In this document: positions 19,118 through 64,000 of the stretch, piece by piece
How the letters are laid out: each line of letters begins with the position of its first letter
Numbering within the stretch: position 1 is the stretch's first letter
Source of the DNA: Ruditapes philippinarum
Taxonomy: Eukaryota
Assembly (NCBI RefSeq): GCF_026571515.1
Contig: NW_026856964.1
Coordinates: 186,001-250,000, forward strand
Direction of reading: 5' to 3'
DNA: 64,000 nucleotides
Translations under genes and position numbers: made by a program
The notes under the pieces: generated by a model
Database searches by the model: none
Told to the model about the DNA's origin: nothing
What the model saw: the letters and a program-made list of their open reading frames with translations, nothing else

Positions 19118-19178
19118 ATGTGGACCAGTGACTGTATTGCCTTCTTTATGCTAGTCGTTTCATGTCAAGGCCAGGGAG
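19118..19178 (+). CDS. Receptor A exon 1 (signal peptide MWTSDCIAFFMLVVSCQGQG)
   Basis: Acceptor at 19093, ATG at 19118, donor gtatta; conserved in copy B. Confidence 0.8.
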
Positions 19179-22100
19179 GTATTAAGATAGCTTTTAAGCA
19201 TCTGTAGATCTTCTTTTTAAACATTTTAATAATATGCTCATTTTTTCCAGTTAGGTGTACCCCTAAAACTAATCACCGCGCACGAATCAGATAAATTTTA
19301 AGAAGCCTAAAATAGTATTCTTTTTTTCAAATGTTTAAGAGTAACTTAGATATAGTGGCTGATTTGTGCCATTTCGGACCCGGATCGAGATTCAAGAAAT
19401 AAAACGGCGGGTACGCGGAGTAAAAACACTATTTAGCGGGGCGCGAAACGATGTTAAATGAAAGTATTAAGTCGAGCTTTTTAAGAATAATTTGGCGGGG
19501 GAGCCAACAACAACACGCGAATTAACGAGCAATAACAATAAATATTTCGCTTGCGGCCCCGCCTTATTACAATTTAATCTCGACTTTTCGACTCCGCGCC
19601 GCCGCTAATCAGCGTGTCTCGCTCCACGCCCTGGCCATTTTTTACTTTTTAATTCTCGACCTTTCACTTTGCGGGGCCGAGGGCGAGAGAGGCATTTGAG
19701 GGAGGTACAGCGCTAAAATCTAAACAATACTAATCCTCTATTTATTTCCGCTCTTGTATCATAGTTTGTGGACCTTTCTGTTGAAAATGTGTCAGAGTTA
19801 AATCGTATACGTCATAATTATATATTATACATGCACAGTGCGTTAACTGGAGTACAGGTATTAGTTACCTGCAGTCCAAAGCATACCCATTGATTTGGGT
19901 TTACTCACTGTGACGACAGAGAAAGGGATAGCGACAGAAATATCATATTCAAATGCTCGTTCATTGGTTACATTTTTTCTGGGGTTTCATATTGTGACAA
20001 CAGGGAACGTGTTTTTATATTTTTGCCTACTATAAAACAAAAAGACAAAGAAAAAAAGCAAATTTATACTCGGGGGCTGTGACCCCTCATACAAGTCAGA
20101 TAGCCTCGTTGTTTCGATGCTCTTTCTATTACATAACGACATAGAGTGGGAGAAGTTTATGTTATCTTTGATTGAATCATATAGGAAGTTTTAGTTAATA
20201 TAAGGGATGATTACACTTTATATGTTTTGGATACATCCTTGTAAAGTTCAAGCTAATGCATTTACCTATATATTGTAAGGTTCAAATATCTTGTCATCTT
20301 TTTCCGTTTGCTTATCTGAGTAGCATTAAAATATATATCTAAATATAATAACCTAATACAGAATTTTGACAAGTCGAATAACCAAAAAAAATAAATAACT
20401 GTACATGTATTTGTATCAGCTTATAAAAATCTCGCATCACAAGTATGTTATATATCAAATAATTGTCTATAAACGACAGTATAATCCGTAAAAATTATAA
20501 ATGAATTTCTAACTTTACCCTTATTTAAAAAGACATAATTTCTTAACTTGTGTGTGTGCGTGCAAGCGTGCGCGTGTGCGCGTGTGTTGTGGGTGAGTGG
20601 AGACTGGGGGAGGGGGGCTGTTGTGGTGATCTTCCCTGGCCTAATGGTTAACAGTGCTACCGTCTATTCACTTGCCCAAGAAGAATGTTGTAGGTTCAAT
20701 TACCGACATTGGCTTTGAATTATCTCAAAAAGGAAAGCTATCTAACTAACTTTCAATTTTTTATTGCTATGATTTTAATCTATTTCAAGTTTCCGTCGAT
20801 ACTTGTAAGGAAGTTTTCCTATCTCTTTATCATGCAATCTAGGAAGTGAAACGTTCATCGTATTATTTCTAGGTATTCTCAACAACAGTGTCCTGTGGGT
20901 AGCAAGTGATGGCTATCTCTATTTTAGTACACGACTACAGGAGTGGACAGAGGCCAAAATCACCCCGCAGGAATTTGGGCAGGTAGGAGAATTACTCGGA
21001 ATTTAATACTTATAATTTCTTTACTGAATATGCATATTGAGAAGAAACATCACTTCATATCGCCACCCAAACAATTACAGATAGAGACTTACTAAAACGG
21101 AACAACACAAATGGTGGAGGCAGCAAATGGGCGAAAAGATTTGGGTGGAGGGGACAGGTTTTAGAGAATTTTGAAGGTTGGCCAAAATAAGATAGGCCGG
21201 TAAAACATTTGAATGTTTACTATATAATGCAATTTGCCGTATGACATGAACTGGAGATGATCCTGAATATTATCAATATCTATATTATAAATTACAAGTT
21301 TTTGTATAATATATTTATATAAAATCTTAATTTTATATATTATATTTATTATTGTATTAACTATAACGATGACGAACAGTGACGGCGTTTTGGCATTTAT
21401 GAACATATTTACTTTTATGTCCAATGAGACCAGTTTTAAACAACCTGTTTAGAACTACTTTCGTGCAAACCGATGAACTACAAACTGCAAAATGTTACAT
21501 ACCGATCGGAAAATGCAGTTTCATTATTTCAGTGGCATAAAGCCTAAAACATACAAGATGCATTGAAATACAAATGTATATAATAAAGATGGTGCAAGCA
21601 ATAAACTATAGAATGCTTTATAAATTGGGTAAATTATTAAGACGAATTAGCAAACTTGATACAAAAATTATTATTTTTTATATCTAAATAGCCATAATAG
21701 ATCGAAAGCTCAAGAGTCATTTAATATAAATTGTTATTCTTTATATTTAAAAAGTCATAAAAGATCTATCTATATAGTCAATTCAGCTGAACCTGACAAT
21801 GAAAAATATAAGCAAAGTTTCACTTTAAGAGAAATAATAACAAAAGATGAATATTGGTTTCATTCGGTGACCGCCTGGGTGACTTTTTCTGTGGAAAACA
21901 GTGTAGAATGCTTACTGTTTGTGAACGTTGCTGTCACTTGTTAATCTGAACACCCGAGCATACGAAATAAAATCTATCTGTATTCCATTTGTCAAAGGAA
22001 ATATCTTTCTTGTATTATACAGTCAATTAAAAGTGTTGTCATTAAAGACGCAAGTTCAATTCATGGCATTGCCGGGGATATACCAACTCGACATCTTGTT

Positions 22101-25100
22101 ACCTCCGACACGGACAATAATTGGATTATACTCTTTGATCTTGATGCTAATGGGATAACATACTTTCATATAGGTACTTCTAAAGGTAAGGCTCCTGTAA
22201 TATTAATAGTTTTAAAATTTGCGCGAAAGTGTAGAATTGAATGTACATGTAATTTTTATGTCTCTTACCATTATTATCTAATATAAGAAATCATATGCAT
22301 CTATTTAAAAGCGGGTGAAAAACTACAACTACAAGTTGTATAATAAATAAAATGTTACAAACATCTGCACTCACATTTTTCATGTCTATCAATCCATAAT
22401 GCCTTAGAAATACTTTTATTTTTATTTCTCTATAGCATTTTAGTGTTGGTGTACTTCTAAAGTTTTAAAAAAAGTTGATATTGTGTCTTATGGTGCTTTT
22501 TGTATTAGGGGTTGAGTATTTTGTATGGAAGACAAAATAATACTTTGTTTTAATTTTGCTAGTTTTCTGTCAAGTAGTTTCAGAATTAGAACTACTTTCC
22601 TCAGGTAAAAAGCATATAAAATGCTCTAAAACCACTTTTTCAACAGTACACTACATGTTTGACCGTTCTAAAGAAGTATAGATTTAATATTTTCTGAGGC
22701 ATAATGTGCCTTTGAGACAAATATTATATATCTTGAAAGGTAAAGCGATGATTTCACACACGCGTTACCCATATAATCCAAAATGTAAGAAAGTTTGAAT
22801 AGTTTCTTTTAAATTTCACGTACATGTACTTTGTAATGATTTCTATCATCACAGACTTTAACATTAATGTGAACCTATTTGCGTGTTAGATTTTCAGTCT
22901 TCTGTTACAGATATAGGACATCTGGCAATAGACTGGTTAGGTAGAAACGTGTATTGGACGGACGCAGGGTTCGGTTGGATAGCTATGAAACATTTGCCAG
23001 AGAACATTACTCAAATAAATTCAGCTGATCAAAATTTTAGGGTCGTTGTGGACGAGTTCATAGAGAAGCCCACAGGGATAGTTGTACACCCGGAAAGATA
23101 GTAATTGCTACATATATTAACTTAGAATACAGTGCTTTATAAGCGCTTTGTTTACTAGAATTCCCGATTATTCATATTCGGACACCCAATAAGAAGGCCT
23201 TACTTTATCAGGCAAGGCTAAGGAAAAAAAAGAAAGAAGGGCGAGGCTCTGTCAACTTTGTTGTTCGTGTCGAGCCTGATAAATCTTATGAACTCATTTA
23301 CTTGTTTGGTATACTAGATATCATTTTTGAAATTTTGATATGCAATGCTTTAAATTTTAAAAATAAAAACCTGTCATGTCGCGTGTTAATATGACAATGC
23401 TCATATCTCTAAGAAATAGTCCCAAATGTATTAAGTCAATGTTTTCGATACATATTTTATCAGTTTCAAACTAGTAGGAGATAGAATATTCAATTCTCTT
23501 CATTATATTTCAAAATATATTGATGGGGTGTCTGATAAAGGTTCGTGTGACTGATAAAGCTAAACTTATCAGGTATAAATTTTATCAACGGAAATCAATT
23601 TAGTCATTTGATAAAATGAAAATATATATAGTATATGCATGTACATATCAATATGTTCTTGTCCTCTTTATAATTTCGTCAAACAGCTTTATGCATTCCA
23701 AGTAAGGAATTTATTAGCTCCTATAAATAGAAACAATGTGAATCTTAGGATTTAATGTACATTTTTAAGTGAATTAAATTAAGGACACTTATTGGTTTAC
23801 TTTAAATCTGAAAAAGGTGCTTTCTTTCTTATTAATCATGGACATAATGCTCTTTGTTCAATTTGTTGGATTGAATCAGTAACATATTCCGAAAGATTGG
23901 CTGTTGTAAAATGATTATTGTCCAATAAATGATTATGAAAAAAGTTTATGATACAATTTAAAAAGCAACATAGATTATTAAAAAAAAGACTGCCCCATTC
24001 TTTTTGAGAATTAAAAGTTATATATACATACTCTACGACATTTATAAAAAATACGTTAGTTTTGTGGATTATTGACCTATTTCATCGTAAAATATAGATT
24101 TTAACCCAATTTTTGCAAGTTGTGATTGAGCTATCTCAAATATTTTTACCTGCGTCATCTATTACCAGTTGAGCAACTTTGAATTAACGATTTATTTCCT
24201 ACTTAAAAATCTTTTATCAGAGAAATTAACACTCCAATCAGCATTTTTTACTGCGCTAATATTATAGGAAATTTATCTAAAGAAAAATATTTCGAGGCTT
24301 TTTGTTTTGGACTGACCACCGGCCAACTCCTAATAAACCAAAATAGAAACTCACTAAATCGTCCATGAGCCAGGAAAGAAAAAAATCAATAATATTGGCA
24401 GCCAAAGTATTGTAACGCCTACCAACCCACTGTACTTGACTCTCTAGATCACACGGGAAAGATTGTAGGTAATGTGATTACCCAAGATCGTAGAAGAACT
24501 ATTTTGAGATATTTCATATGTATTTGTCAAATGGAAATGGCAGAACGAATACTTTGTTTGACCGTATCCCAGGAACTAAACTAACTATTGGAATGGCGAG
24601 ATATATACGCGACGGTTATTACTAAACATTATGAAAAAATTACTATACACATAACTATTATTATCATTTGGGCTATTCTCTTGTCAACATGAAGATTACC
24701 TCATATTTAATATATTTTGCCTCCGATAATATGTAATCTGGATGAGCGTTGACATTGCCAAAATACATTTAAAAGAAAAATGGGAGAATGTGTGATTACT
24801 ATTTAAACCACAAATACATCAAAAATAGTATAGAACTAAGGCAATTTGATATCTGATTCAAGAATCGAGTTCCTTACATAATGAAAGTTACTGATCGGGG
24901 CAAACGTGGTCAATATATGTGACGTAATATAGTGATTTATATGCGCCTAAGTTCAGAATTCTAGCTCCTCATATGACGATTTGTTTTTTATTATACGAGT
25001 CATCATCGTGTGTTCTCTCAGCTTTATTTATAGATATTTAATAAGATAGTTGCATTTGAAGCTCTTTTGCATTTGAGACCAGAGAAATTCGTCCTCATTA

Positions 25101-28100
25101 TATAGGCATAGTCTTTGTGTGTATCTATATTTATATAAATATAATTCTTACAAAACATCATGTAAAGCGAACATAAGATATTAGATGTGTATGTTCCTAG
25201 TTGGAACGACCTAATTACCTTCTTGACCAGGTATTGGATTTAAAAAGGTCCGAATATGGCCATGCCCATCTGAACATTCTATGTGAATAATATCAAACTC
25301 AGCTTACAACTCCTCCAGAAACAGATTTATAATGGTGTTTCATCGTTTCATGATGCAATGAAGATCATCTAAAGTCTTCTAGCTTCCGGAAAGAGTTGTA
25401 CGGTGGTTTACTACTGTGATATTCCTTTTTACAGCAAAGCTTAACCGAGACGTCACGATGCACTTTCTAGTTTTTATGTATTCGGTGGCAAACGACAGCC
25501 TAACCCACCCTGACCTCGTAGTATGTTTATATGATTGAGAAAAGTCTAAACATTGAACACTATTTTTAGAAAGTTTCAGTCGAGCGTCTGTCAATCAATC
25601 TCATCAATTCGGCTTCACATTCTAAGTTCTTTCATCCATGATTCATTTCAGGATTCGATCATAACTAATATAAAATACAGTGCAAAATTTTAATAGAACG
25701 GATGTACGTTTCGCTGAAAGAAAATTAATGAAAGGCCGAACAAACATACCAAGCCCAGTATAGAAATTGAACCAATGCGCAAAACTTTTTCCAACAAATT
25801 TGTATAGGTATATGCATTCAAGAAATGCAGACAGACACCGAACAGATGGTAAATGTGGCAACTAACATATAATTCTATATTATAAAAAGATCTTTTCTCA
25901 CAAGTCTACTGCAGCGCCGCTCTCACTCAATAACCTTGTTCACACACAATCAGCTTGTAGTTACACCACTTGACGCTAATAACACCACCTTGACGATAAT
26001 ATCACTATAGGATCTGACAAAAACATTGTACGCATTACCTACCACCTGAATATTTCACCAGTGCAGTAAATATATAAATGTATACAACACTTCTATACAC
26101 ACGTGTGGAACACAATTATATTCAAACACTTGACACACAATATCATACGACGCACCTTAAAAGATCTGAGCCACACACGACCATTAATTTTTTATGGTTT
26201 TATGTTAATCAGCAAAGTCGTATTGATTGAACCATTCAACAAACTGTATTTAAGATGATTACCGAATTAATATTTCATGTTAATAAAGGGAGGGTAATTG
26301 TTAGAAATAATTCAGCCTCTTCTATTAAATTCCATAAGTCAATTTTATCCATTAAGAATATGATATGCATATATAATTATGAATATAGACCTTAAATATG
26401 TTATCAAATATTTGGAAAATGATCATGAGCTCTTACAAATATGCCCGTTCTGTCCATGTTGAAAATTTGAAAAAAATTTGTGCTAAATTACAGACATATA
26501 ATAATATAACGCAATGAAGGAAGGTGTCATGCAGTTCTCCCAATTACATGTACAAAAGCGAATATGAGCGAAATCAATGCATTAACATGATTATACAAAC
26601 GTGTCATATAGACGACTTGACGTATTCACACCACTTTACAATCAATTGACTTCTACACCATTTGACATATACAAACCAGTTTAAAACAGAGAGTGACACA
26701 ATCCTATCGCTGAATTCTCGATCGTGATCTTAAATGCACACAACATTGTCACTGTGATTGTATAACAATCAATTGTGACAATATAACAGGCGACACTATG
26801 ATCGAGATATAAATCATCCCACTCCAAAGTTTTCTTCTATATAATAAAAATGTTTAAGTACTACTTGACATATACACCTCTTGATTTATACACCATTTGA
26901 CATATACACCTTTGACGTATACACTTATTGACGTATATACCAATTAACGTATATGCCAACAACCGGGGACACTAACCGTCATTTATCACAGCGATGCAAT
27001 TGTGTACAACGTAATTAAGAAATAAACATCGCCTGTAGAGTTTGTATATGGCATCTAACACCGGTTTGGATTTGATGCCCCCGTAGGAATTGAACCACAT
27101 GAAAAAACTTTTAGGACCTGTGGACAGTGGATAATTTTAGTCGTATCAAAAAAACGTACAAGCAACCAGTTGTTATAATAGCCGATAGTACACCTCTCAG
27201 GCGTAAGTTTATTTCGATTCCTTAACACACGATAAAAATTAAGCGAAAATAAGCAAAATCACTGAGTGTATTTTTTAAAGCCGAGGAAAAAACTTTTCGG
27301 TCGATTTTCGATATAACGCTGTTCAATTTTCGCACTACCTTACTGTATCAGCAAGAATATTGAAATACCGTCGTTAAACCAAAAAGGAAAATACTAAGAA
27401 AAAAAAAACGTTCCTATTTTATCAAGTTTTGAACAATAAAAACTAACGTCGTATTGTGTTTACGATTCAGTGTCCCAATTTATCATTCTAATGTTATGTA
27501 ATAGAAAATAACGTCAGGCCTTGTTTATGAACGATGTTGTTTACTTAGCTATACGTCACTTACGCTGCCTCTTACGGATTAAAACGCCGCTTTTGTCAAA
27601 AATATTTATTAACGGCATAACCGGATCTAATATGTCGTCGCGTTAGTGTATTGAGAACTATTTCTGTATTTGTATGAAAAGAAAACATTAACAAACTGAA
27701 AATATATATCATACACAATGACTTAATATATATAGATACTATCTAAAATGCTTGTTAACTATCGTAACAATCAGAAAGGGGTGAAAACATTAACAGCTCT
27801 ATATTGACAAGTAGTTCCCTAACCGCGTGTTTATGTGCAGTTTAACACCAGTTTTTTTACTTCTTTGTCTATAGTGACAAAGTCACGTGAGTGTTAGAAT
27901 TTAAAATAACAGTAGAAAAACATAAAATGTAATAAATGTTATATAAATTTAAAGTTACTTGCGTTTTTGTTTTTCAAAAGCATTGTGTAAGAAGGTAAAT
28001 GAATGTGATCAAATATGTCTACATATGGAGATGGATGCTGGATTCATCGTGCCTCTTGAGTGGAGTGGTTTATGACCTACATTTCCGGCTACAGTGATTG

Positions 28101-50500: not shown

Positions 50501-50512
50501 CATATTCGACAT

Positions 50513-50893
50513 ACTCCACTTTTGCCTAATTATGGTCAAAACACGTAAAAATGTGTGCAAAACGACCCCTAAATACACCGGCATCACATCGTACGGTTGA
50601 CATCATTTAACAATTATTATAAATTTAAATTAAGTTAATGTCATCTGCTGTTGTCGGTAAGTAAATGGTTGGATTTAACTTTATGTTTTTAATGTTTTAA
50701 TGAAAACATCTAGTAAGACAGGAGAGTATTCTTTCAACTGATACACGCACACGGTGCAATTCATTCTCATTTATGCAAACACTCCCATACAATTTGACGA
50801 GGGGACTCCACATTTGCCTAATTGTGGTCAGAATACTTAAAAAATGTGTGCAAAACGACCCCTAAATATACAGGCATCACATCGTATGGTTGA
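50513..50893. repeat. About 88-bp direct repeat, two copies about 290 bp apart
   Basis: actccacatttgcctaatt...aaaacgacccctaaat...catcacatcgta.ggttga at 50513 and 50804. Confidence 0.8.
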
Positions 50894-52739: not shown

Positions 52740-53006
52740 GGGGGCAAGCGTGGCTAAGGTCGTTGACTTCAAACCACTTGCTCCTCACCGCTGTGGGTTC
52801 GAATCCCGACAGGGACTTTGGATTCTTTCATGTGAGGAAGCTATCCAGCTAGCTTACGGAACGTCGGTGGTTCTACTCAGGTGCCCGTTCGTGCCTGAAA
52901 TAATGCACGGAAGGGCACCTGAAGTCTTCCTCCACAAGTAAAGCTGGAACGTCGCGATATGACTGATACTGTGTCGATGTGACGTAAAAGCCAATTAAAA
53001 CAAAAA
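52740..53006 (+). mobile_element. Near-full-length tRNA-derived SINE (resembles bivalve Meta-core SINEs) with a 12-bp TSD
   Basis: B box gggttcgaatccc, core tgtgaggaagctatccagct..gtcggtggtt..gtcttcctccac, A-rich tail. TSD agtgaatatgat at 52726-52737 and 53007-53018. Confidence 0.88.
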
Positions 53007-54103
53007 AGTGAATATGATTTTATAAAAAGTTCTGTTGACTACTGTTTGGACCAATAAGATTTCAGCTATATTTAGATCATATGATAATATGTTATATTAT
53101 ATTATTCCGTTCATTACTTCATGCATGGATACAATTGGTTTAACAGTTCTATGAAATCAATAAAGTGCCATCAGCAATAAATATTAATTGAATCGATTAA
53201 CCATTATATAAGAGATAAAACAATCAATCTTTCGAAATTAAATGAGATAGGCGGCAACTATGCAATTAAATGAGCGAATTTTTTTCTGATCTTGCATGTG
53301 CATACAATATACATTTCAATTTTTAAAAAAGCTAAGAAATAAGTGTTTATATGTATTTTATTGTTAATTATTATTATGGTCTACCACTCAACCTAGTTGA
53401 CTCAAGCTGTGTTTAGTACAAACCATGTTTCCTCATATGGTATTTGAGAAACTGATTAAAGATAGTTGCATGATGAAGAAATATTCAAAAATATTGAAAA
53501 GATGTCATAATACAATTCTGTTTTTACTTGGTATAAAGTTTTGTATTTCATTGTTTTTTCGTTTATTGCCATTCGAGTGGTTTGATATCTCTTTCCTACG
53601 ACACAGTCAGTTATTTCAAACAAAAAACAAACTAATAAGGTACAGTTACGGATAAAATATCTGCTTAAAAGCGCATGACACAATCGGACCTTTTCTGCTA
53701 TTATTTCATTTTAAAGTTCTTATCCAAAGACTGCCGAAAAGGGCGCAAGAAAGTATACATATCAAATTGTAAAGGCAGGCATGGCGCAGCGATTTCGTTA
53801 TCCATCGAAATGACGAATGGAATAGTATTATGTTAACATAATCAAAAGAGATAAACTGAAGAAAGTAAATAAACTTTGAGAAACTGTTTTTATAAAGTAA
53901 CGTTGCACCCTCAAGTTTGTTATAACGTGATAGCCAATCAGATGTAAGAAAATTACATTACATTAAAACCTTCTATACCCATGTATCAGGTTATATTTGT
54001 TCATTGTGATGAAAGTGTTAACGATGAATCAGAAATATCACATTACAACTTAAATTTACCTAGGTTTTTATAATTTCAGGGCATGCGAACCAGAGAGGGA
54101 AAT

Positions 54104-54164
54104 ATGTCGGCCAGTGACTGTATTGTCATCTTTATGTTAGTTGTTTCATGTCAAGGCCAGGGAG
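54104..54164 (+). CDS. Receptor B exon 1 (signal peptide)
   Basis: MSASDCIVIFMLVVSCQGQG; an extra in-frame ATG lies at 54083. Confidence 0.8.
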
Positions 54165-57100
54165 GTATTAAGATAACTTTTGAATATCTATTTTAAATCA
54201 ACATTTTAATCTAGGGGCTACTTTTTCCTGTGAGGTGTACTTGTCAATCATATCACCGAATGATTAAGATAAACAATAAGTTATATAACATCTGCTTTTT
54301 TCACACCAAACTGTGAAGAGCAATATGCCGACTTTATAAAAATTTTGGTGGAAGTAGGTCAGACGTTCTGGTTCATTGTTTCAAGGGCCTAGAAACACGG
54401 ATGTTGCCTATATGTTATTAGCTAGTTGTTAGCCATATTTATATCCTCCTGGTGGTATTTGAACCCACAGTAGTTAAGGGCAAATTATCGAAATTTAGCG
54501 CAGCCACTCCGTTTTTTTAGTACTAGCATTGGAAGTTATATCAAAACTAACACCATAATTATCACTAATATCATATCAAGTTATACTTGCATCATCATCA
54601 TGATCATCATCGTCATCATAACATCAACAACGTCATCATCATCATCTTTTTCTTCTTCTTTTTCTTCTTCATCATCATCATCATTATCATTATCATCATC
54701 ATCAATATCACCACCACCACAACCAAAACCACCACCAATTCATTCTCCTTTTTTGTCGTCGTCGTCATTGTGATTTCATTTTATATGTTTTTGATAATCC
54801 TTTTAATGAACAAGCTTATGCATTTACAAATATTTTGTAGGGTTCACGTATATTCAAATTTTTATCCGTTATCATTAAGATGTAATCACACATCGCTGTA
54901 TTCAAATTGATAGACTCATGTATGTACCATTTATGTATTTCAATAGATTGAATATATTCAGTTTACATAGTTACTTGTTGTCGACCTCATGGAAGATATA
55001 TTGTTGTTTAAATGAGAACTCCTATTAAATAAAATCTTTATTATTGCTTATCTAAGTCCATCAAAACATAGCTTCATAAATGAATATTATTACTTTTTGA
55101 GGAATGGTGACAGGTTATATGGTCAAGAACAAACTGCTGCTGCATCATCATGTAAAAATCACGCGTCGCAAGAATGTTATATAGCAAATAACTGTCTTTA
55201 AACATCAATGTAACCCGTAAAAGTTTATAAAATGCATTTCTAACACTGCATGCACCACAATTTAAACATAGATCATTTCATAACTTGTGTGTTAGGGGGG
55301 CTTCCATTGCTTTATGACTCCGTTCACTAGCCTCACAGTGTCTGTAGGTTCAATTACAGACGGGGTCTTTGATATATCGCAAAAGCGGAAAATATCTAGC
55401 TAGCATTCAATTTTCATTGATATAATTTTAATCGTTTTCAAGTTCCTGTCGTGAATTGTCAGTAAGCTTCCATCTCTCTTTATCATGCAATCAAGAAAGT
55501 GTAACGTTCATCGTATTATTTTTTTAGCTATTCTCAACAACAGTGTCCTGTGGGTAGCACGTGATGGTCATCTCTATTTTAGTACACGACTACAGGAGTG
55601 GACAGAGGCCAAAATCACCCCGCTGGAATTTGGGCAGGTAGGAGAATTACTCGGAATTTAATACTGATCATTTCTTTAACGAATATGCATATTGAGAAGA
55701 AATAACACTTCATATCACCACACACACTAGCAGACCGAGACAAAAAGTGATGATTGAGGCAGAAAATAGGTGGGTGTGGAGTAAAAGATTAGGGGTGGTT
55801 GAAGAAAAATGTTGAGGGTGGGTCACACTAAGGTAAAGCGGTAAAGCATCTAAATTTTAACAATATAATGCCATTTGCAGTATGATTTGAACTGAGGATA
55901 AACTTATATCGATTATATTTTTATTAAAATCTCTATTCTTAATATTATATCTGTTATTGTATTAACTATAACGATGCAGAACAGTGAATCATTTTGGCAT
56001 TTCTGAATATATTTACTTTTTATGTGCAATGAGACCAGTTTTAAACAACCTGTCGATAACTTTTTCCTTGCAAATCGATGAACTACAAGCTGCATATGTA
56101 ACATTCCAAGCGCAAAAAGTAGTTTCAACATTTGAATGGCATAATGCCTAAAACATATAAGATGCATTGAAATATATATAAAGAAGCTGGTGCAAGCTAT
56201 AGAATGCTTTATACATTGGGTAAATTATCAAAAGAGTAAGCAAACATGATATAAAATGCTATTTTCTATATTTAAAAAGCGATAATAGATCGAAAGTTCA
56301 AAAGTCATTTTAATATGATGTTATGCTTTATATTCAAATAGTAATAAAAGATCGATTGATATGCTCTCATGATGACCTTTTCACTATGTGTAATTATTAT
56401 CTGTCAAATAATGACTTTCTTTGAATGGCACTCCAGAAAGAGCGTGACACTGCATCAGTATTTTAGGGCTAAACAAAAATTTACAAAAATGTTTAATAGA
56501 AAATGTGAACGGTTCTATTGTGCCGATTTGAATGGAAATTTATTATTACATTTGTAATATTGTAAAATTATTGACTTAAGCCATTGAATATGATGTGATA
56601 TTCACCGAAATATAATATATTCATCGAGACTAAAGCCGAGGTCAATATGTTATTTTGCGGTTGAATATCATGTCATATTCAATGGCTTGCTAGTAAATAA
56701 TTGTTTTATTGTATGAATAGGCAAAGATAAAACACATACACACACACACACACGCACGCACGTGCGCGTGCACGCACACACACAATTATAAGGAAATACA
56801 AAACACAACTTTTGCTTGTTTTCATGGAAGTTAACGGTTCCAATTTTATCAGTGTGAATGGAAATTTAGTATCACATTCGTAATATATATGTTATTATAA
56901 AGCATATTTTATTGTGTTATTAAAATGCTTTTTGAAAGTTCGAGGAAAAGCACATTCAAGAGCAAAAGATGGTTATCGATATTTAACAGAAATTAAAAGA
57001 GTTCCATTTTGTACATTTGAATGGAAATTAAGTATCACATTCGTAACATATATAGTTATAAGTATATATTATTGTTTAATTAAAATGTCTATTGAACGTT

Positions 57101-60100
57101 CGAGGTGAAGCTAATTCAAGAGCAAAAGATGAATAACAGTGTCATTCGGTGACCACTGGGTGACTTTTTCTGTGAGAAACAATGTAAGATGCTTACTGTT
57201 TGTGAACGTTGTTGTCCCTTGTAATTCTGAACACCCAAACATACGAAATAAAATTCATCTGTAGTCCATTTGTCTTAGGAAACTTTTTTTATTGTATCAT
57301 ACAGTCAATTCACAGTGTTGACATTGAAGGCGCAAATCCAAGTCATGGCATTGCCGTGGATATACCAACTCGACATCTTGTTACCATTAACTCCGAAAAG
57401 GACTTTTATGCGATTGCACTCTTTGATCTTGAAGTTTATAGGATAACATACTTTCATGTAGGTATCTCTAAAGGTAAGGTTCCTATGATATTTTCAGTTA
57501 AAATTACAGAATTAGGCGTAAGTGTAAAATTGTATGTAAGTTGTATTTATCAAATTTATGTAAGACTTTAGAAAACATATGATTCGATATAAAAACCGTT
57601 GAAAAGCTACAAATACATGTTTTATATATTAAATATACTAGAGAATGCTCCAAATATGTACATGTCTCACGGCAAATTTGTGATCTTAAAGGCCCATTAT
57701 GCCTCAGTAATGCTTTTTATTTCTCTATAGCATTGTGTTTTTGATGTACTTCTACAGTTTCAAAAACAGTTGCTCATTGGCCAATAATCTGTTTCTTCTG
57801 GTGCTTTTTATATTTTGTACAGTTATAGTGATTGTGTATTTTGTATGGAAGTCAAAATACTACTTTATTTACATTTTGCTACTTTTATGTCTAGTAATTA
57901 CATAATTAGAGCTACTTTTCTCAGGTAAAAAAATGTCTAAAAAGCTTTAAAACCATTTTTTTAACGGTACACGTCTCATGTTTGACCGTTCTTTAGAAGT
58001 AAAAAATCATTTCTTTAGGCATAATGTGCCTTTGAGACAAATAGTATATATTCTAAAAGGTATAGCGTTGCTTTTATGTGTTTTACCTGTAGAGTCCAAA
58101 CTTTCACAATATTTGAACATTTCTTTTTAAATTTCACGAACATGTACTTTGTAATGATTTCTATCAACACGGGATCAAAATCTTTATTCTATCTACTACA
58201 TATAGAACAATAGAAACGTATGTTCAAAGGGTAAATTAATGTGAACATATTATTTTGAAATTTGATTTTTTAGTCTTTTATTGCAGACATTGGACATCTT
58301 GCGATAGACTGGTTAGGTCGGAACGTGTATTGGACGGACGCAGGTTTCGGTTGGATAGCTATGAAACATTTACCAGAGAACATTAATCAAATAAATTCAG
58401 CTGATCAAAATTTCAGGGTTGTTGTGGACGAGTTCATAGAGAAGCCTACAGGGATAGTTGTACACCCGGAAAGATAGTAATTGTTACATATCTAAACTTA
58501 TATTACAGCGCTTTAACAGCGCTTTGTTTACAAGAATTCCGGATTATTCATATTCGGACACCCTATAAGAAGGCCTAAATTTGAAAGTTTCTGACAGTCA
58601 GTTTTGCAAAAAATAACCCCAATAGTCTTTATCTAACCATTTATTTAAATGCCGCGTTTGTCAAGTTATATAGAATACCTTGCTAGTGTCGGATATTACA
58701 ATATTTATCAGACAAGGCTAAGAAAAAAAAGAAGGTCAAGTCTCAGCCAAACCTTTATTTGTCTCGTACCGAGCCTGATAAATTTTATAATATAAGACAG
58801 ACACTTTTTTGGTATACTATTTATCATATTTGCACTTTTAATATGCGTTTTATTTTTAAATTTCAAATAAAATAAAAAAAAATATGCCAGGTCATGTTGC
58901 ACGCAGTAATATGCCGAGGGTCATATCTTTAACATATAGCCCGAAATGTGTTTAGTCAATATATTCGTTTTAAATTTTATCAGTTTAATATTTAAAACTA
59001 GCAAGAGGTTAAATATTCCATTCTCTTTATTTTATTTCAATATGTATTGATGAGGTGTATGATTAAGCTGAGGGGGACTGAGAAAGCTAAATTTATCAGG
59101 TCATAATCTTATCAACAGAAATCAATGTAATCACGTGATAAAATGGAAATACTTATATCAATGTGTGTCAAATAGCTTTATGCATTCGAAGTAACGAATT
59201 TATTAGCTCCTATAAACTGAAACAATATTATTCTTAGGGATTAACATACTTCTTCAGAGAAAAAAAAGGAAATACTTTGAAATGGTTTACTTTAAGACTG
59301 AAATAGGGTTTTTTTTTTATTAATTTCATGGACATATTTTTCGATGTCAAATTGGGCTGAATTAGTAATATATACCGGAATATCAAGATCGGCTGTTATA
59401 TAATGATTATTGTTTATTAATACCTATGCTTCTATTTATAGTAACAAAATCAAGGGTATTTCAGGGCCAAGATGGCTGCTGACGTTGAATGAATATAGTT
59501 ACTTACCAATTGTTTTAAATAAATTAATCGATCACAATCAGCAAAGCTTAACATTGAGTATTTATAAACTCCAGACAATACACGACCCTCAGAAATTCCA
59601 AAATGATTATAGATTGACGGTAGGAAAAGATTAATCGTTCGCATTTAGACCTAGACATCAGAAACCGTTCTTGAAGGCACAAAACTTCATAAAATACTGG
59701 CACTATATCTTTATTAGAAATGCAATTCACACAAAAATGTAAAGAGTAGAGTATTTATCGGTAAAACAACAATAAAACAACATTCTCTTATATTCATTTA
59801 GTGTTGTCTCCATTCTCTAAGTTAATCGGAGTGTTAAACTGTATGACAGATATTTGTTTACATTGACAACTGTCCGTTTCTTAGAAAGGACGACAACCAA
59901 GATTAGCGACGATGTCTAAACGCCGTATTTCGGACATAGCATTTAAGACGTTAATCGAGTTCACAATGTTTAACGGTAGTTGTAGAAATTTACGTTGGTA
60001 TGAAACAGCTCTAGGTCATTTGATTTGTACGACGGGGCTAATTCCCTGAATGTGATATAACAGATTACCGAGTGTTTTGATTTTGCTCTCTTTTGTATCA

Positions 60101-63100
60101 CAGTCAAAAAATAAGATCACGTCCCTTTTTGTCATACTATGAAACCCCATATGAACGAGCATCTGAATATGACATTTCTTTCGTTATCTCGTTCTCTGTC
60201 GTCACATTAAGTACACCCCAGAAAAAATGAGTCATTCGGTGAGCATGCTATGGAGTGCGGATAACTTATACCTGTACCCAAGTTAACGCTCTGAACATGT
60301 ATATGTATACAATTTAACTCTGACATAATTTCAACACAAAGGTCCCCAAACTATGATATACGTGAACAATTGATTTTGTTTTCATAGTAAAATATAAAAT
60401 TTAACCCAATTATAGCAAAATATTTAGTTATCTTTATTTCTACATGTTCACTTACAAGTTACACTTTGATAAACATTATTTCATTTAAACCATTTTAATG
60501 AAGACTCCAAAGCATTTTACTACATTGCAAACATATATAGAAATGTATCCAAAGAAACTGTTTCAGCTTTTTGTTTTGGACTGACACCGGCCATACTCCA
60601 AAAATAGAAAGGTCTAATCTGATTGGTCAGGAAAGAAAAACAATCATTTGGCAGAGTATTATCACGCCTACAACGCTATGTATTGACCAATCAGCGGAAA
60701 GATTGTATTGGAGTGACCCAGAAAGAAGAACTATTGAATATTCAGATTTTGATGGAAATGGCAGACGAATACTTGTGTCGCATCCAGAACTAAACTACTA
60801 TGGAATTGCAGTATTTCGGGTATCTAAAACGAAAAATTCTGAATACTTTATTCAAAGGCATCACTTGTAAATGAAGTCCTTATTTAAGATTTCGCTCCAA
60901 TGTAAAACGAGGTTGACATTTTTGTGTAATTTTAAAAGAATATGGTAAATGTAGTGTTTACATTAATAACCACAAATATGAATAGTAAATACGATTGTTC
61001 TGTAAATCATTTCTTACAATATGAAAGTTACTGATCGGTCAATTGACGAATACGTGTTACATGATGCTGAAAGTCTTAATGTCGGATTGTTTTCTATACA
61101 CACACAACTTTGTCTCAGCAATAAGTGTTGCTGCTTTGCATTTGACACAGAGCTTCTGTCCCAGTGGAGTGCTTTTGTGTTGTTTTTTTTTATAAAATCT
61201 AAAGCTATGGCAATATAAAGGGAGGGGAGAGTATCTTTGACAAAGTGCTTAAGGGCGTTGATTTTAAAATACTTGCCACCCACCGCTTTGGGTTCAACTC
61301 ACTCCAGGAACGTTTGATTCCTTCATGTGAGGAAGCTATCTATTCAGTTCCGGGAGCTTCGTTGTTTTACTGTGATGTCCTTTAAAAGTAATGCTTAACA
61401 TAGGTCATATGACTTTGATAGTATTGGTGCAACGTAAGCCTAACCCACCCTGACCTTTGTAGTATGTTTATATGATTAGAAAAGTCTAAACATGAAATAT
61501 TTGAAGTTTCAGTCCGGCGTCTGTCAATCAACTCATCAATTCGGCTCATTTCTAAGCTCTTTCATCATTTATTATTTCAGGATTCACTCATATATACAGT
61601 GCCAAATTTTAATAGAACGGGGTACGTTTCGCTGAAAGAAAATAATGAAGGCGAACATATACAAGCCAGTATAGAAATTGAAAAGACCAAACTTTTCGAT
61701 GTGATGGCATATGCATCAGAAATTCAGGAAGAACCGACAGATGGTAAAGTGAACTCTTATAATTGTTTTAAAAGATCTTTTTCTTACAAGTTCTAACGCC
61801 TTTTATCTCATACATATTTTATCTAACCAATCGTAATGCTAATACACCTTTTGACGTAAACACCACTTGACGTTTACACAATTTGACATAAACACCGCTT
61901 GACATATACACTACTTGACATATACAAAACTTGATATATACGATATATACACCACTTGACATATAGACCATTTGATTTATACGCCACTTGACGTATCCAC
62001 CACATGACATATACACGACTTATTCACCACTTGAGATTTACACCCCTTGACATAAACTCCATATATATTGACATATCAATCAGTTGACGTATTCACCATT
62101 TGACATATACACCATTTGACATATACACCATTTGACATATACACCATTTGACATATACACCATTTGACATATACACCATTTCACATATACTCAACTTGAA
62201 GTATTCATCACTTGACATGTACACCACTAGACGTATAAACCATTTTACATATACCCCAATTGCTGTATACACAATTTGACATACGAGTATACACTACCCG
62301 ACGTAAATACAACTGTATATATTACCACTTGACCTTTATGCCAATTGACACATTCAACAACAACCGGGGACAACTACAGTTGACAGAATGTCATTTATCA
62401 CAGCGAGGCAATTGTGTAAGAACTTTCAACAACATAGTAAACATAAAATGTAATAAATGTAATATAAATTTAAAGTTACTTGCTTTTTTGTTTTTCAAAA
62501 GCATTGTGTAAGAAAGTAAATGAATGTGATCAAATATGTCTACATATGGAGATGGATGCTGGATTCACGTGCCTCTGTAGTGATGGTTATGACCTCATTT
62601 CCGGCCGTAATTGTACAGGTAATGTTTTCATTTTTCTTGTCATTCAGCATTTTTTTCTCCGGTGATTTGAAGAATTTGATACTGCTTGGTCTGCCAAAAG
62701 AAATTTGTGAAAAGAAGAGATCATTATACTGAGACTTGGTTTGATTAAGATTATTCATTGGCAATACGAAATTATCCAACATCCCCTACTCCTCCTAGCA
62801 TTAATTTAAGCAGTATTAAATTTTCAGCACTTAACCTTTCACTATAATGGTCTTGGCGGAAAGGAAAGATAAAATTACACCGAGAGTGTGAGAGATGTTG
62901 TTTTCATCGTTGTTCCCCACAAGGAGAATCTTACCCCTTGTTAACACAAGTTTGATGCCATTGTTTTCGATGGATCTCCTTTATTATGCATTGTTACCAT
63001 CATCCTTGGAAGAGAAAAAATGACTTGCACTACCCAATTGTCGATGCCATTTTACATATTTACAGATTCATCTGACAATGCTCATTTACCTAATTGTAAA

Positions 63101-63838
63101 ATTTGCTTATATAAGTGGTTACTTCAGGTATTGTTTTAATCTGTCATTCTTAGCCATTCTTAGTTTTGTTCCCCGCTGTACATAATTCATACCGAGAAGG
63201 TATTGTAAAGAAAACAATATTACGGATAATCCAACACAAGTATGTAGCTCAGTGGATTCTGACATTAATTAATACATTTTTGTTCCCTAAAATTTCATGC
63301 GTTTATCTTTTTTGTCTATTTTTATCTATTATTAATATTATAATTAGGTTCTTTAATATTTGCAAGTCAAGGTTTTGAACTATTTATTTTAAAGAAACAT
63401 AATCTGCAAAATTGTAATACATGCACTAAGAAAATTGCTGTTATATTTCATTTTCTTTTACTTTCGCAATAAAAAAAAGATATTTATAAAACAGTCTAAG
63501 GAATGAAGTTGGCAATATTCTAAATCAAACAAAAACTTTGTTACCCCAAGACATAACTTAATTATAAAAATAAATGTGTCAAATGTTAATTCTGCAAATG
63601 ATCTTACTATGATTGACACTATCAATATTGGTGTCAGACACTTTCTCATTGTTATCTTTTGTGATGCAATTTTGTTGTTGTTTTCAGTTGATGAAAAAGT
63701 GTTGGAGAGACATATTTTGTTTACAAATGACAAAAGCATATGCGCCGTTCCTGTATCTGTACTTAGCCTTGGGAGCTCTGTTGCAGCTATCTTTTCTATA
63801 CATTGTGATCTGGTGCAAAGTGATAGCTACGTTACTAG
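54104..63838 (+). CDS. LRP-like receptor copy B (tandem paralogue): exons 1-8 intact, gene continues beyond the window
   Basis: Exons 54104-54164, 55528-55637, 57305-57473, 58287-58476, 60567-60819, 61581-61743, 62502-62618 and 63688-63838 splice in frame with GT-AG sites and mirror copy A. Confidence 0.92.
54588..54770. repeat. Compound (CAT)n(TTC)n(CAC)n(GTC)n microsatellite
   Basis: Read directly from the sequence. Confidence 0.9.
55528..55637 (+). CDS. Receptor B exon 2
   Basis: ILNNSVLWVARDGHLYFSTRLQEWTEAKITPLEFGQ. Confidence 0.85.
56564..56707. mobile_element. Palindromic Crypton-like non-autonomous repeat; related pieces at about 52262-52390 and 51255-51395
   Basis: ccattgaatatgatgtgatattcaccg pairs with cggttgaatatcatgtcatattcaatgg around a cgag..aagccgagg centre. 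Superfamily assignment is from memory. Confidence 0.6.
57305..57473 (+). CDS. Receptor B exon 3 (hypervariable)
   Basis: SIHSVDIEGANPSHGIAVDIPTRHLVTINSEKDFYAIALFDLEVYRITYFHVGISK. Confidence 0.87.
58287..58476 (+). CDS. Receptor B exon 4
   Basis: IGHLAIDWLGRNVYWTD...HPER; one amino acid differs from copy A. Confidence 0.9.
60567..60819 (+). CDS. Receptor B exon 5 (two YWTD repeats)
   Basis: FLFWTDTGHTPKIERSNLIG...RLYWSDPERRTIEYSDFDGNGRR. Confidence 0.92.
61240..61445 (+). mobile_element. Decayed SINE of the 52740 family, shared with copy A at about 25250-25505
   Basis: gggttcaac..ttcatgtgaggaagctatc core; the same 3' junction (gcctaacccaccctgacc) is present in both paralogues. Confidence 0.7.
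61581..61743 (+). CDS. Receptor B exon 6
   Basis: DSLIYTVPNFNRTGYVSLK...LFDVMAYASEIQEEPTD. Confidence 0.87.
61840..62350. repeat. 16-bp minisatellite (atatacaccatttgac), roughly 30 degenerate copies
   Basis: Perfect 16-bp period at 62101-62180. Confidence 0.92.
62502..62618 (+). CDS. Receptor B exon 7 (EGF 1)
   Basis: LCKKVNECDQICLHMEMDAGFTCLCSDGYDLISGRNCT. Confidence 0.9.
63688..63838 (+). CDS. Receptor B exon 8
   Basis: DEKVLERHILFTNDKSICAVPVSVLSLGSSVAAIFSIHCDLVQSDSYVT. Confidence 0.87.
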
Positions 63839-64000
63839 GTGTACCTGAATTAACTTTATTATAATTTAATATTTAAGATTCCTTTAATGAACGTAGATGT
63901 TATTGCTGATCAATAAAATTGTTTTTTCTTCGGAATTTTAATATTTTAGGTTATCATAAAACCTTACAATGATAAACATCTCTAATGGACTTGGTCATCA

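What the first reader, a model, noticed from the sequence alone, without database searches (positions are those of the whole stretch)
19118..64000. Tandem array of LDLa-less YWTD/EGF-Sushi receptors: candidate diversified recognition system
Seen: two head-to-tail genes about 35 kb apart with identical exon phases. The full copy encodes SP-(propeller-EGF)x3-Sushi-TM plus a roughly 195-aa Tyr-rich tail. Known: LDLR/LRP1/2/4/5/6 all have LDLa repeats, LRP5/6 have four propellers and PPPSP motifs, and none has a juxtamembrane Sushi domain. This is therefore not an orthodox LRP, though pipelines would label it LRP4/6-like. Inference: tandem duplication, a localised hypervariable ectodomain exon and a signalling-type tail resemble invertebrate allorecognition and immune receptor clusters (Hydractinia Alr, Botryllus fester). 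The function is not shown by the sequence.
Basis: partly seen in the sequence, partly recalled or inferred. Interest (0 to 1): 0.8.

Follow-up and report, generated by a model that had tools for sequence, protein, structure and literature searches.

The report
Duplicated clam YWTD–EGF–Sushi receptor genes
The window holds two tandem copies of a Manila clam gene for an uncharacterised cell-surface receptor (three LRP-type beta-propellers, one Sushi domain, a tyrosine-rich tail) from a bivalve family; one exon has diverged unusually fast, but nothing yet shows a diversified recognition system.

Summary
The core observation holds. Two head-to-tail paralogues lie about 35 kb apart in Ruditapes philippinarum, 70-88% identical in DNA, introns included. 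Copy A encodes a signal peptide, three YWTD-propeller/EGF units, one divergent Sushi domain, a TM segment and a 195-residue tail with 13 Tyr. No LDLa motif occurs anywhere in 78 kb. Spliced RNA contigs confirm the EGF3, Sushi, TM and tail exons.

Corrections:
- Copy A is not an open frame as assembled. Five exons are broken, four of them inside patches carrying 138 small insertions against 11 deletions. This looks like assembly noise, not decay.
- Copy B has a 2.47 kb transposon in exon 16 and runs off the contig.
- RefSeq annotates only 405-414-residue models, one joining A exons 1-4 to B exons 5-8.
- Truncated copies lie on two other contigs.

The LDLa-less three-propeller layout is widespread in invertebrates, and the version with Sushi domains occurs in tandem in another bivalve, Sinanodonta.

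Exon 3 shows 20 replacement codons and no silent ones (dN/dS about 8, p about 0.01 uncorrected). Exon 4 beside it has 1 replacement and 10 silent. This is suggestive only. It is a new variant of a known kind, of moderate interest.

The parts
19118..19178 (+). Copy A exon 1: ATG and signal peptide (MWTSDCIAFFMLVVSCQGQG), ends in phase 1
   Evidence: Exact match to RefSeq XP_060593844 (P0043)
20876..20982 (+). Copy A exon 2, start of propeller 1
   Evidence: dN/dS against B 0.85 with very low dS, a possible conversion tract
22023..22185 (+). Copy A exon 3, the fast-diverging exon (blades 1-2 of propeller 1)
   Evidence: 20 replaced and 0 silent-only codons against B, plus a 6-nt indel; dN/dS about 8, p 0.013 / 0.007
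22909..23100 (+). Copy A exon 4, a YWTD blade, ends in phase 2
   Evidence: 1 replacement and 10 silent codons against B, dN/dS 0.02
24297..24620 (+). Copy A exon 5 (approximate); the frame is broken by 38 small insertions
   Evidence: lies in the insertion-rich patch 24100-24599
25651..25858 (+). Copy A exon 6 (approximate); the frame is broken by 20 small insertions
27981..28105 (+). Copy A exon 7, EGF1 (approximate); frameshifted in its 3' half
29116..29252 (+). Copy A exon 8, first blade of propeller 2
   Evidence: dN/dS 0.14
29824..29881 (+). Copy A exon 9 (3' end uncertain)
   Evidence: 97% identical to B in a 93-nt block; aligns to scallop P0080 blade 1
30620..30800 (+). Copy A exon 10 (approximate), blade 2 of propeller 2; the frame is broken by 20 small insertions
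31257..31394 (+). Copy A exon 11 core, blade 3 of propeller 2
31999..32125 (+). Copy A exon 12 core, blade 4 of propeller 2
32825..32968 (+). Copy A exon 13 core, last blades of propeller 2
33457..33570 (+). Copy A exon 14 core, EGF2
   Evidence: Pfam FXa_inhibition 33.3 bits
33775..34000 (+). Copy A exon 15 core, first blade of propeller 3; the A8 run at 33954-33961 shifts the frame
   Evidence: B and copy C read through in frame; C has A6 in otherwise identical sequence
34863..35031 (+). Copy A exon 16
   Evidence: AG/GT boundaries and frame continuity
37200..37324 (+). Copy A exon 17
37892..38048 (+). Copy A exon 18
38433..38542 (+). Copy A exon 19, last blade of propeller 3
   Evidence: The loose end of RNA contigs upstream of the EGF3 exon maps to 38511-38540
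39164..39289 (+). Copy A exon 20, EGF3
   Evidence: RNA joint 39289|40370 with GT..AG; Pfam FXa_inhibition 31.4 bits
40370..40561 (+). Copy A exon 21, divergent six-Cys Sushi/CCP domain
   Evidence: Pfam Sushi 17.1 bits against a cut-off of 20.7; best own-genome relatives are exons scoring 27-35 bits to Sushi; the leading Foldseek hits to the AF2 model are almost all CCP modules; RNA joints on both sides
40979..41102 (+). Copy A exon 22, transmembrane segment and RRRNRR stop-transfer
   Evidence: RNA joints 40561|40979 and 41102|41863; hydrophobic stretch read directly
41863..41973 (+). Copy A exon 23, cytoplasmic tail part 1
   Evidence: RNA contig ends at 41973 and the unspliced contig runs 41944-42545, which places the junction
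42516..42685 (+). Copy A exon 24, tail part 2 (conserved YxxL and RRxSS)
   Evidence: RNA joint 42685|44217; motif conserved in three copies
44217..44506 (+). Copy A exon 25, tail part 3 with stop codon; the 3' UTR continues
54083..54164 (+). Copy B exon 1, signal peptide
   Evidence: Exact match to RefSeq XP_060593843 (P0153)
55528..55637 (+). Copy B exon 2
57305..57473 (+). Copy B exon 3, the fast-diverging exon
58287..58476 (+). Copy B exon 4
60567..60819 (+). Copy B exon 5, intact, two YWTD blades
61581..61743 (+). Copy B exon 6
62502..62618 (+). Copy B exon 7, EGF1
63688..63830 (+). Copy B exon 8; RefSeq models read on to a stop at 63846-63848. The gene continues beyond the window to the contig end.
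24100..24599 (.). Largest of the insertion-rich patches in copy A. The others are at 25600-25899, 28000-28199, 29400-29499, 29600-29799, 30600-31099 and 34200-34299.
   Evidence: 5-11 A-specific insertions per 100 nt in these bins, in exon and intron alike, with no excess of mismatches; 138 insertions against 11 deletions, compared with 116 against 87 in the other 110 bins

Best explanation
The locus holds two tandem paralogues of a bivalve type-I membrane receptor gene in Ruditapes philippinarum. Further truncated copies lie on other contigs.

Shown: the protein is a signal peptide, three six-bladed YWTD beta-propellers each followed by an EGF module, one degenerate six-cysteine Sushi/CCP domain next to the membrane, a single TM helix, and a 195-residue Tyr-rich tail. 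Copy A is transcribed and correctly spliced through EGF3, Sushi, TM and tail.

Inferred:
- Copy A is probably the working full-length gene. Its apparent frame breaks are most likely local consensus errors in the assembly.
- Copy B keeps an intact 5' half but is disrupted by a young DNA transposon in exon 16 on this haplotype.
- By analogy with LRP4/5/6, LDLR and nidogen, the propellers bind extracellular protein ligands.
- The tail has a conserved acidic YxxL, several further YxxL/F motifs and an RRxSS site, but no NPxY and no PPPSP. It would couple the receptor to endocytosis or sorting, or to tyrosine-phosphorylation-dependent adaptors.
- Exon 3 (blades 1-2 of propeller 1) has changed 20 of 54 residues between the paralogues while neighbouring exons are conserved. 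This points to relaxed or diversifying selection on one small surface region.
For: - Co-linear A/B homology including introns.
- Exon map from the RefSeq proteins.
- Four GT..AG RNA joints in contigs from two studies, plus single raw RNA reads.
- Exons 16-25 chain into one 523-codon ORF, all with AG/GT boundaries.
- YWTD-EGF fold: AF2 pTM 0.80, Foldseek E about 1e-23 to LRP6, LRP4 and LDLR.
- Sushi.
- No LDLa.
- Relatives with the same layout.
- The insertion-only patches coincide with A's broken exons. Read on B's frame, they give conserved ORFs.
- Exon 15 has A8 where copy C has A6.
- Exon 4 has dN/dS 0.02 with dS 0.35, so both copies were constrained for most of the time since duplication.
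- Allelic RNA variants in the Sushi exon are 3 silent to 1 replacement.
- The transposon in B has 50-nt TIRs and more than 40 copies at 92-97% identity.
Against: - The assembly-noise reading is therefore inferred from the pattern only.
- After projection onto B's frame, A's exons 5, 6, 7 and 10 still show about 27 replacement to 8 silent codon changes and one stop, which does not exclude real decay.
- RefSeq built no full-length model. Its models end after exon 8, and one joins A exons 1-4 to B exon 5.
- The 5' start of the transcript carrying A's 3' exons was not seen.
- Ligand, tissue and function are unknown. The tail motifs are short and not specific.
Confidence: 0.6

Rival explanations
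1. This is a diversified recognition system. The tandem paralogues and their alleles would present a hypervariable patch (exon 3) on propeller 1 for allorecognition, gamete recognition or pathogen recognition, and the Tyr-rich tail would signal.
For: - Exon 3 has 20 replacements, 0 silent-only codons and dN/dS about 8 (p 0.013 binomial, 0.007 by simulation), beside exon 4 with dN/dS 0.02.
- 12 of the 20 changes fall in predicted loops.
- The family is multi-copy in the clam and lies in tandem in Sinanodonta.
- Three distinct exon-5 protein variants exist in public data.
Against: - Only two copies of exon 3 exist in the genome. Only two near-complete genes exist, and the others are truncated fragments.
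- The p-value does not survive correction for about 12 exons. With a protein-guided alignment dN/dS is 2.1, p 0.16.
- Exon 3 has diverged no faster than its flanking introns, 15.4% against 15-18%.
- Loop enrichment is weak: 12 of 26 loop residues against 8 of 30 strand residues.
- The tail has no ITAM or ITIM spacing.
- No allelic data for exon 3 were obtained, and one search found nothing.
Confidence: 0.1
2. Both copies are decaying, transcribed pseudogenes left by segmental duplication, and the working family members lie elsewhere in the genome.
For: - Frame breaks in five A exons.
- A transposon in B's exon 16.
- Truncated copies on C2517 and C15109, and a tail pseudo-exon with stops.
- RefSeq found no full-length ORF.
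- Overall dN/dS across the other exons is about 0.57.
Against: - A's breaks sit in patches with a 5-10-fold excess of small insertions. These patches have almost no deletions and no extra substitutions, and they span intron as well as exon. Natural decay does not produce this pattern.
- Exons 16-25 form one clean ORF.
- Exons 4 and 8 are under strong purifying selection.
- Allelic variants in the expressed Sushi exon are mostly silent.
- Spliced RNA reaches a k-mer depth of 37-124.
Confidence: 0.15
3. The locus works as a variable 5' cassette. A's exons 1-4, with their own promoter, are spliced over 37 kb onto B's exon 5, as in RefSeq isoform X2. One downstream body would then receive either of two N-terminal half-propellers that differ mainly in exon 3.
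For: - RefSeq XP_060593844/5 has exactly this structure, and XP_060593843 uses B's own exons 1-4.
- A's exons 1-4 are intact and exon 4 is strongly constrained, while A's exons 5-7 are unreadable as assembled.
Against: - The chimeric model is the expected artefact if A's exons 5-7 are mis-assembled, because gene prediction then chains to the next valid exon 5.
- A's downstream exons are themselves expressed and spliced.
- No read evidence for the A4-to-B5 junction was seen here.
Confidence: 0.12

Closest known systems
Invertebrate LDLa-less three-propeller 'LRP4-like' proteins (Mizuhopecten yessoensis XP_021373323.1, Argonauta hians GAB1603458.1, Owenia fusiformis CAH1782417.1, Saccoglossus XP_006815763.1)
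   Same: The layout is SP-(YWTD propeller-EGF)x3-TM with no LDLa. The clam exons align co-linearly: exon 4 to residues 110-171, exon 5 to 172-256 and exon 15 to 662-739 of the scallop protein.
   Different: Identity is only 25-45%. These proteins have a Ser/Thr-rich stalk instead of a Sushi domain. The scallop protein and an unnamed Logan relative (P0075) end in short tails with NPxY. The clam's canonical orthologue of the scallop protein lies elsewhere, at C4556 and C7600, so the window genes form a divergent side branch.
Sinanodonta woodiana 'Sushi domain-containing proteins' KAL3890969/71/75/77
   Same: Each has (YWTD-EGF)x3 followed by Sushi repeats. KAL3890977 and KAL3890971 also end in a TM helix and an acidic Tyr-rich tail, without LDLa. 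The four genes lie at adjacent loci on one chromosome.
   Different: They carry six or more Sushi repeats per unit against one here, and the gene models look like fusions of two units. Sequence identity to the clam exons is about 30-39% over short stretches.
Vertebrate LRP4 / LRP5 / LRP6
   Same: They share the YWTD-EGF pair fold (Foldseek E about 1e-23, TM up to 0.89 on LRP6 E1) and the type-I membrane topology. RefSeq names the clam gene after them.
   Different: The clam gene has no LDLa repeats, three propellers instead of four, and no PPPSP or NPxY. It has a Sushi domain and a 195-residue Tyr-rich tail.
Pro-epidermal growth factor
   Same: It is an LDLa-less membrane protein built of YWTD propellers and EGF modules. 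RefSeq names isoform X1 'pro-EGF-like'.
   Different: Pro-EGF has two propeller regions, nine EGF modules and a releasable EGF peptide next to the membrane (own knowledge). None of these is present here.
Hydractinia Alr1/Alr2 and Botryllus fester/uncle fester allorecognition receptors
   Same: They are tandemly arrayed single-pass receptors with a localised variable ectodomain region. Fester carries a Sushi domain (own knowledge; PMC12582321 and PMC11507803 were listed but not read in depth).
   Different: They have no YWTD propellers. Their hallmark is extreme allelic polymorphism or splice diversity tied to a fusion/rejection phenotype, neither of which is shown here. Clams are solitary animals.

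Membership tests
LDL-receptor superfamily, core members (LDLR, VLDLR, LRP1/2/4) | LDLa (class A) ligand-binding repeats | tested here: not met
   No LDLa signature in six frames of 77,855 nt. The only Cys-rich open segments on the + strand are EGF1-3 and the Sushi exon.
LDL-receptor superfamily, core members (LDLR, VLDLR, LRP1/2/4) | YWTD six-bladed propeller followed by an EGF module | tested here: met
   AF2 model with pTM 0.80; Foldseek E about 1e-23 to LRP6, LRP4, megalin and LDLR. Single-exon Pfam scores for Ldl_recept_b are below the cut-off (13.9-17.4 bits) and FXa_inhibition scores 31-33 bits.
LDL-receptor superfamily, core members (LDLR, VLDLR, LRP1/2/4) | NPxY internalisation motif in the tail | tested here: not met
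   The tail read from exons 22-25 has no NPxY, only NPSF.
LRP5/6 subfamily | Four propeller-EGF units, three LDLa repeats, PPP(S/T)P motifs | tested here: not met
   Three units, no LDLa, and the tail has PPPSQ but no PPPSP.
Invertebrate LDLa-less three-propeller TM proteins | SP-(propeller-EGF)x3-TM, co-linear over the whole ectodomain | tested here: met
   tblastn of scallop P0080 places the clam exons in order. Propeller 3 exons 16-19 match the scallop sequence segment by segment.
Invertebrate LDLa-less three-propeller TM proteins | Ser/Thr-rich stalk and short tail (NPxY in scallop P0080 and in P0075) | tested here: not met
   A Sushi exon replaces the stalk, and the tail is 195 residues without NPxY.
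Sushi / CCP / SCR domain | About 60 residues, four consensus Cys, an invariant Trp, and the CCP beta-sandwich fold | tested here: met
   Pfam 17.1 bits, below the cut-off of 20.7. However, the Cys and Trp columns are invariant in an alignment with paralogous exons that score 27-35 bits. The AF2 model has pLDDT 74.8, and its leading Foldseek hits are almost all CCP modules, the best with probability 0.98. The extra Cys pair makes it a six-Cys variant.
Bivalve (YWTD-EGF)x3-Sushi(n)-TM receptors (unnamed) | Three propeller-EGF units, then Sushi repeat(s), TM and a Tyr-rich tail, with no LDLa | tested here: met
   Window copy A; Sinanodonta proteins; clam contig C8765 with about eight Sushi-like exons (one confirmed by Pfam, the rest read from the Cys/Trp pattern), a TM exon and an NPGY tail, and with YWTD exons on the same strand.
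Polymorphic allorecognition / diversified immune receptor clusters | Many intact tandem paralogues | tested here: not met
   Two near-complete copies exist and the rest are fragments. Exon 3 occurs only twice in the genome.
Polymorphic allorecognition / diversified immune receptor clusters | Positive selection or hyper-polymorphism focused on a recognition surface | tested here: inconclusive
   Exon 3 has dN/dS about 8, p 0.007-0.013 uncorrected, and depends on the alignment (2.1, p 0.16). Its divergence equals the intron rate. No allele data.
Polymorphic allorecognition / diversified immune receptor clusters | Link to a recognition phenotype or to immune or gamete expression | not testable with these tools
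   Run metadata are coded, and only one reads call was allowed.

The most novel reading that the evidence does not exclude
Bivalves carry an undescribed receptor family, (YWTD-EGF)x3-Sushi(n)-TM with Tyr-rich tails, arranged in tandem arrays. In this reading a small patch on the first propeller, encoded by exon 3, is under diversifying selection. Upstream 5' cassettes (A exons 1-4) can also be spliced onto a downstream gene body. Together these would generate alternative recognition surfaces for gamete, self or pathogen recognition.
Probability: 0.1. Interest if true: 0.7.

Novelty: new variant of a known kind. Interest (0 to 1): 0.35.

Why it matters
If copy A is a working gene, it is a member of an uncharacterised bivalve branch of the YWTD-propeller receptors. 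This branch has lost LDLa repeats and gained Sushi domains and a long Tyr-rich tail, and its ligands and role are unknown.

The sharp contrast between exon 3 (20 replacements, no silent change) and exon 4 (1 replacement, 10 silent) offers a concrete, cheap target for population-genetic tests of diversifying selection in a commercially important clam.

Practically, the locus shows how patches of insertion-type consensus error in this assembly can break genes and lead RefSeq to build a chimeric two-paralogue model. That matters for anyone counting pseudogenes or gene-family sizes in this genome.

Tried and rejected
- I first read copy A as a pseudogene because of stops and frameshifts in exons 5-7. 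I gave this up as the leading view when the breaks proved to lie in insertion-only patches that also cover introns.
- A PPxY (PPPY) motif in the tail was considered. RNA contig ends place the exon 23/24 junction so that the Tyr is intronic, giving ...DPPPSQER....
- Assembly duplication or haplotigs: rejected. A and B are only 70-88% identical and carry different transposon content, and no other contig carries either copy.
- Hidden LDLa exons: none found by motif or by Cys-rich scan.
- More copies upstream: none in 79 kb.
- A profile built from four relatives found only some of the exons.
- The word search with the exon 3 open frame found nothing.
- Three literature searches found no paper on YWTD-Sushi receptors in molluscs. 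The Venerida P-selectin expansion paper does not mention LDL or YWTD domains.
- No self-built spliced model was sent to any search or fold tool, and all searches used single exons. A joined translation of exons 16-25 was computed inside one script only, to test frame continuity. The fold of propeller 1 used the public RefSeq protein P0153 as returned by a tool.

Full report
**Source and annotation.** The window is contig C5451:186001-250000 of a 1.41 Gb assembly. A protein found with one exon is 100% identical to RefSeq entries of Ruditapes philippinarum. These are XP_060593844/5, 'LRP4-like isoform X2' (405 aa), and XP_060593843, 'pro-EGF-like isoform X1' (414 aa).

**Two real paralogues.** blastn of the window against itself, extended with the 13.9 kb that remain of the contig, shows that 53.1-77.8 kb is co-linear with 17.7-35.4 kb. 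Identity is 66-89%, introns included. The start codons lie at 19118 (A) and 54083/54101 (B), 35 kb apart. No other contig carries either copy, so this is not a haplotig or a false duplication. The 79 kb upstream holds no further copy.

**Gene structure.**
- Mapping the two RefSeq proteins gives exons 1-8 of B and exons 1-4 of A, with identical splice sites and phases.
- Downstream exons of A were placed from open frames, A/B conservation, co-linearity with a scallop relative, and AG/GT sites.
- Contigs of two runs from different studies, laid on 38700-44650, carry GT..AG joints at 39289|40370, 40561|40979, 41102|41863 and 42685|44217. Single raw RNA reads support two of these.
- The sequence that precedes the EGF3 exon in those contigs maps to 38511-38540.
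- Exons 16-25 all have AG/GT boundaries and chain into one 523-codon frame ending at 44504-44506. The tail from RRRNRR is 195 residues with 13 Tyr.

**Domains.**
- Single exons score only weakly in Pfam: Ldl_recept_b 13.9-17.4 bits, FXa_inhibition 31-33 bits, Sushi 17.1 bits.
- An AF2 model of the public 414-aa protein (pTM 0.80) is a YWTD propeller plus EGF. It matches LRP6 E1, LRP4, megalin and LDLR at E about 1e-23.
- The best relatives of the Sushi exon in the clam genome are exons that pass the Pfam Sushi cut-off at 27-35 bits. Their alignment keeps the Cys and Trp columns, with an extra Cys pair.
- The AF2 model of the Sushi exon (pLDDT 74.8) hits almost only CCP modules among the leading Foldseek matches.
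- No LDLa motif or acidic Cys-rich module occurs in 77,855 nt.

**State of the copies.**
- As assembled, A's exons 5, 6, 7 and 10 are frameshifted.
- Relative to B they carry 38, 20, 7 and 20 small insertions and only 4 deletions. Read on B's frame they give conserved sequence with one stop.
- Across the whole A/B alignment, 19 bins of 100 nt (24100-24599, 25600-25899, 28000-28199, 29400-29499, 29600-29799, 30600-31099, 34200-34299) hold 138 A-insertions against 11 deletions. The other 110 bins hold 116 against 87. Mismatch rates are not raised, and the patches include intron.
- A local burst of insertions of this kind, without deletions or extra substitutions, is what uncorrected long-read consensus looks like. 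Decay does not look like this. This step is an inference, because no reads could be laid there.
- A's exon 15 has an A8 run where copy C, identical in the flanks, has A6 and reads in frame.
- B's exon 16 is split by a 2.47 kb element with 50-nt terminal inverted repeats and more than 40 copies at 92-97% identity. B then runs off the contig.
- Copy C (C2517:14151-26900) begins at the equivalent of A 32433. It is 96.3% identical to A over 3.9 kb and lacks the Sushi exon region.
- C15109 carries the Sushi, TM and first two tail exons only. A tail pseudo-exon with stops lies at C2517:76.6-77.4 kb.
- RefSeq isoform X2 joins A exons 1-4 to B exons 5-8. This is most simply an artefact of A's unreadable exons, though a real alternative 5' cassette is not excluded.

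**Divergence between A and B.**
- With the DNA-guided alignment, exon 3 has 25 differences. All lie in 20 replaced codons, none is silent-only, and there is a 6-nt in-frame indel. Sd is 1 and Nd is 24, giving dN/dS of about 8, with binomial p 0.013 and simulation p 0.007.
- A protein-guided alignment gives dN/dS 2.07, p 0.16.
- Exon 3's divergence (15.4%) equals that of the flanking introns (15-18%).
- Exon 4 has 1 replacement and 10 silent codons (dN/dS 0.02, dS 0.35). The contrast with exon 3 gives Fisher p 3e-6.
- Other exons pool to a dN/dS of about 0.57.
- In the model, 12 of the 20 changed residues lie in loops.
The inference of diversifying selection is only suggestive, because it rests on two sequences and one exon chosen out of about twelve.

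**Relatives.**
- Scallop, argonaut, annelid and hemichordate proteins of 1068-1348 aa share SP-(propeller-EGF)x3-TM without LDLa or Sushi. Those read in full have a Ser/Thr-rich stalk, and two end in short NPxY tails.
- The clam's own orthologue of the scallop protein lies on C4556 and C7600, so the window genes form a divergent branch.
- Sinanodonta woodiana has four adjacent genes with (YWTD-EGF)x3-Sushi(n). Two of the models also end in a TM helix and a Tyr-rich tail.
- Clam contig C8765 has about eight Sushi exons, a TM exon and an NPGY tail. It also holds YWTD exons on the same strand.
- An earlier scan note reports a similar gene elsewhere in this genome.

**Tail.** There is no NPxY, PPPSP, ITAM or ITIM. 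An acidic YxxL (YDYL, or YHNL in other copies) and an RRxSS site are conserved in three copies. Allelic RNA variants in the Sushi exon are 3 silent to 1 replacement.

**Verdict.** This is a real, expressed, lineage-specific duplicate pair of a bivalve YWTD-EGF-Sushi receptor. It is an unusual architecture within a known superfamily. The recognition-system reading is unproven.

**Limits.** No self-built joined model was sent to any search.

Noticed in passing
window 24100-24599, 25600-25899, 28000-28199, 29400-29799, 30600-31099, 34200-34299: Patches of copy A carry 5-11 small insertions per 100 nt relative to copy B, with almost no deletions and no extra mismatches. This looks like unpolished long-read consensus. 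If it is common in this assembly it will create false pseudogenes.
   Followed up: partly
window 19118-23100 joined to 60567-63848: RefSeq isoform X2 (XP_060593844/5) is a chimera of copy A exons 1-4 and copy B exons 5-8 across a 37 kb 'intron'. Both RefSeq isoforms end by reading through the exon 8 donor site.
   Followed up: partly
L005:630-3100 (contig C5451:260630-263100, beyond the window): A 2.47 kb non-autonomous DNA transposon with 50-nt terminal inverted repeats (CCCAGCAAACACATGACG...) and internal 11/22-nt tandem repeats. It has more than 40 genomic copies at 92-97% identity, so it is young and possibly still mobile. Here it is inserted in an exon.
   Followed up: partly
window 57686-58033: An interspersed repeat of about 350 nt in the intron between B exons 3 and 4. 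The 38 other matches listed in the genome are 72-77% identical (2,915 first-look candidates, only 40 scored).
   Followed up: no
L018/L012, C2517:14151-18057 against window 32433-36365: A 3.9 kb stretch of the truncated copy C is 96.3% identical to copy A, while the adjoining parts are 71-86% identical. This indicates a recent gene conversion or a recent partial duplication between contigs.
   Followed up: partly
window 9538-10587 (+): A 349-codon single open frame that looks like ankyrin repeats followed by a Ser-rich tail. It would be the upstream neighbour gene. It was not scanned against any family library.
   Followed up: no
window 1142-1642 (-): An open frame that looks like a fragment of a non-LTR retrotransposon reverse transcriptase (...YRPVSILSIISKILERAVYNQL...).
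   Followed up: no
window 39553 and 42844: About 30 raw RNA reads of run X21 join 39553 to 42844 with (GTCT)n-like letters between, and without GT..AG ends. Many reads there run on into unrelated sequence. These are probably transcripts of a repeat located elsewhere and not a splice of this gene.
   Followed up: no
L017, C8765:152001-162000 (-): About eight consecutive Sushi-like exons (one confirmed by Pfam, the rest read from the Cys/Trp pattern), then a TM exon and a tail with NPGY. YWTD exons lie on the same strand of this contig at 182.5, 95.1 and 32.7 kb. This may be a tandem set of (YWTD-EGF)-Sushi(n) receptors.
   Followed up: partly
window 20860-21066 against 55515-55721: Exon 2 and its flanks are far more alike between A and B (dS 0.04; 80-94% identical in all three translated frames) than the rest of the locus. 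This suggests a short gene-conversion tract or a conserved non-coding element.
   Followed up: no
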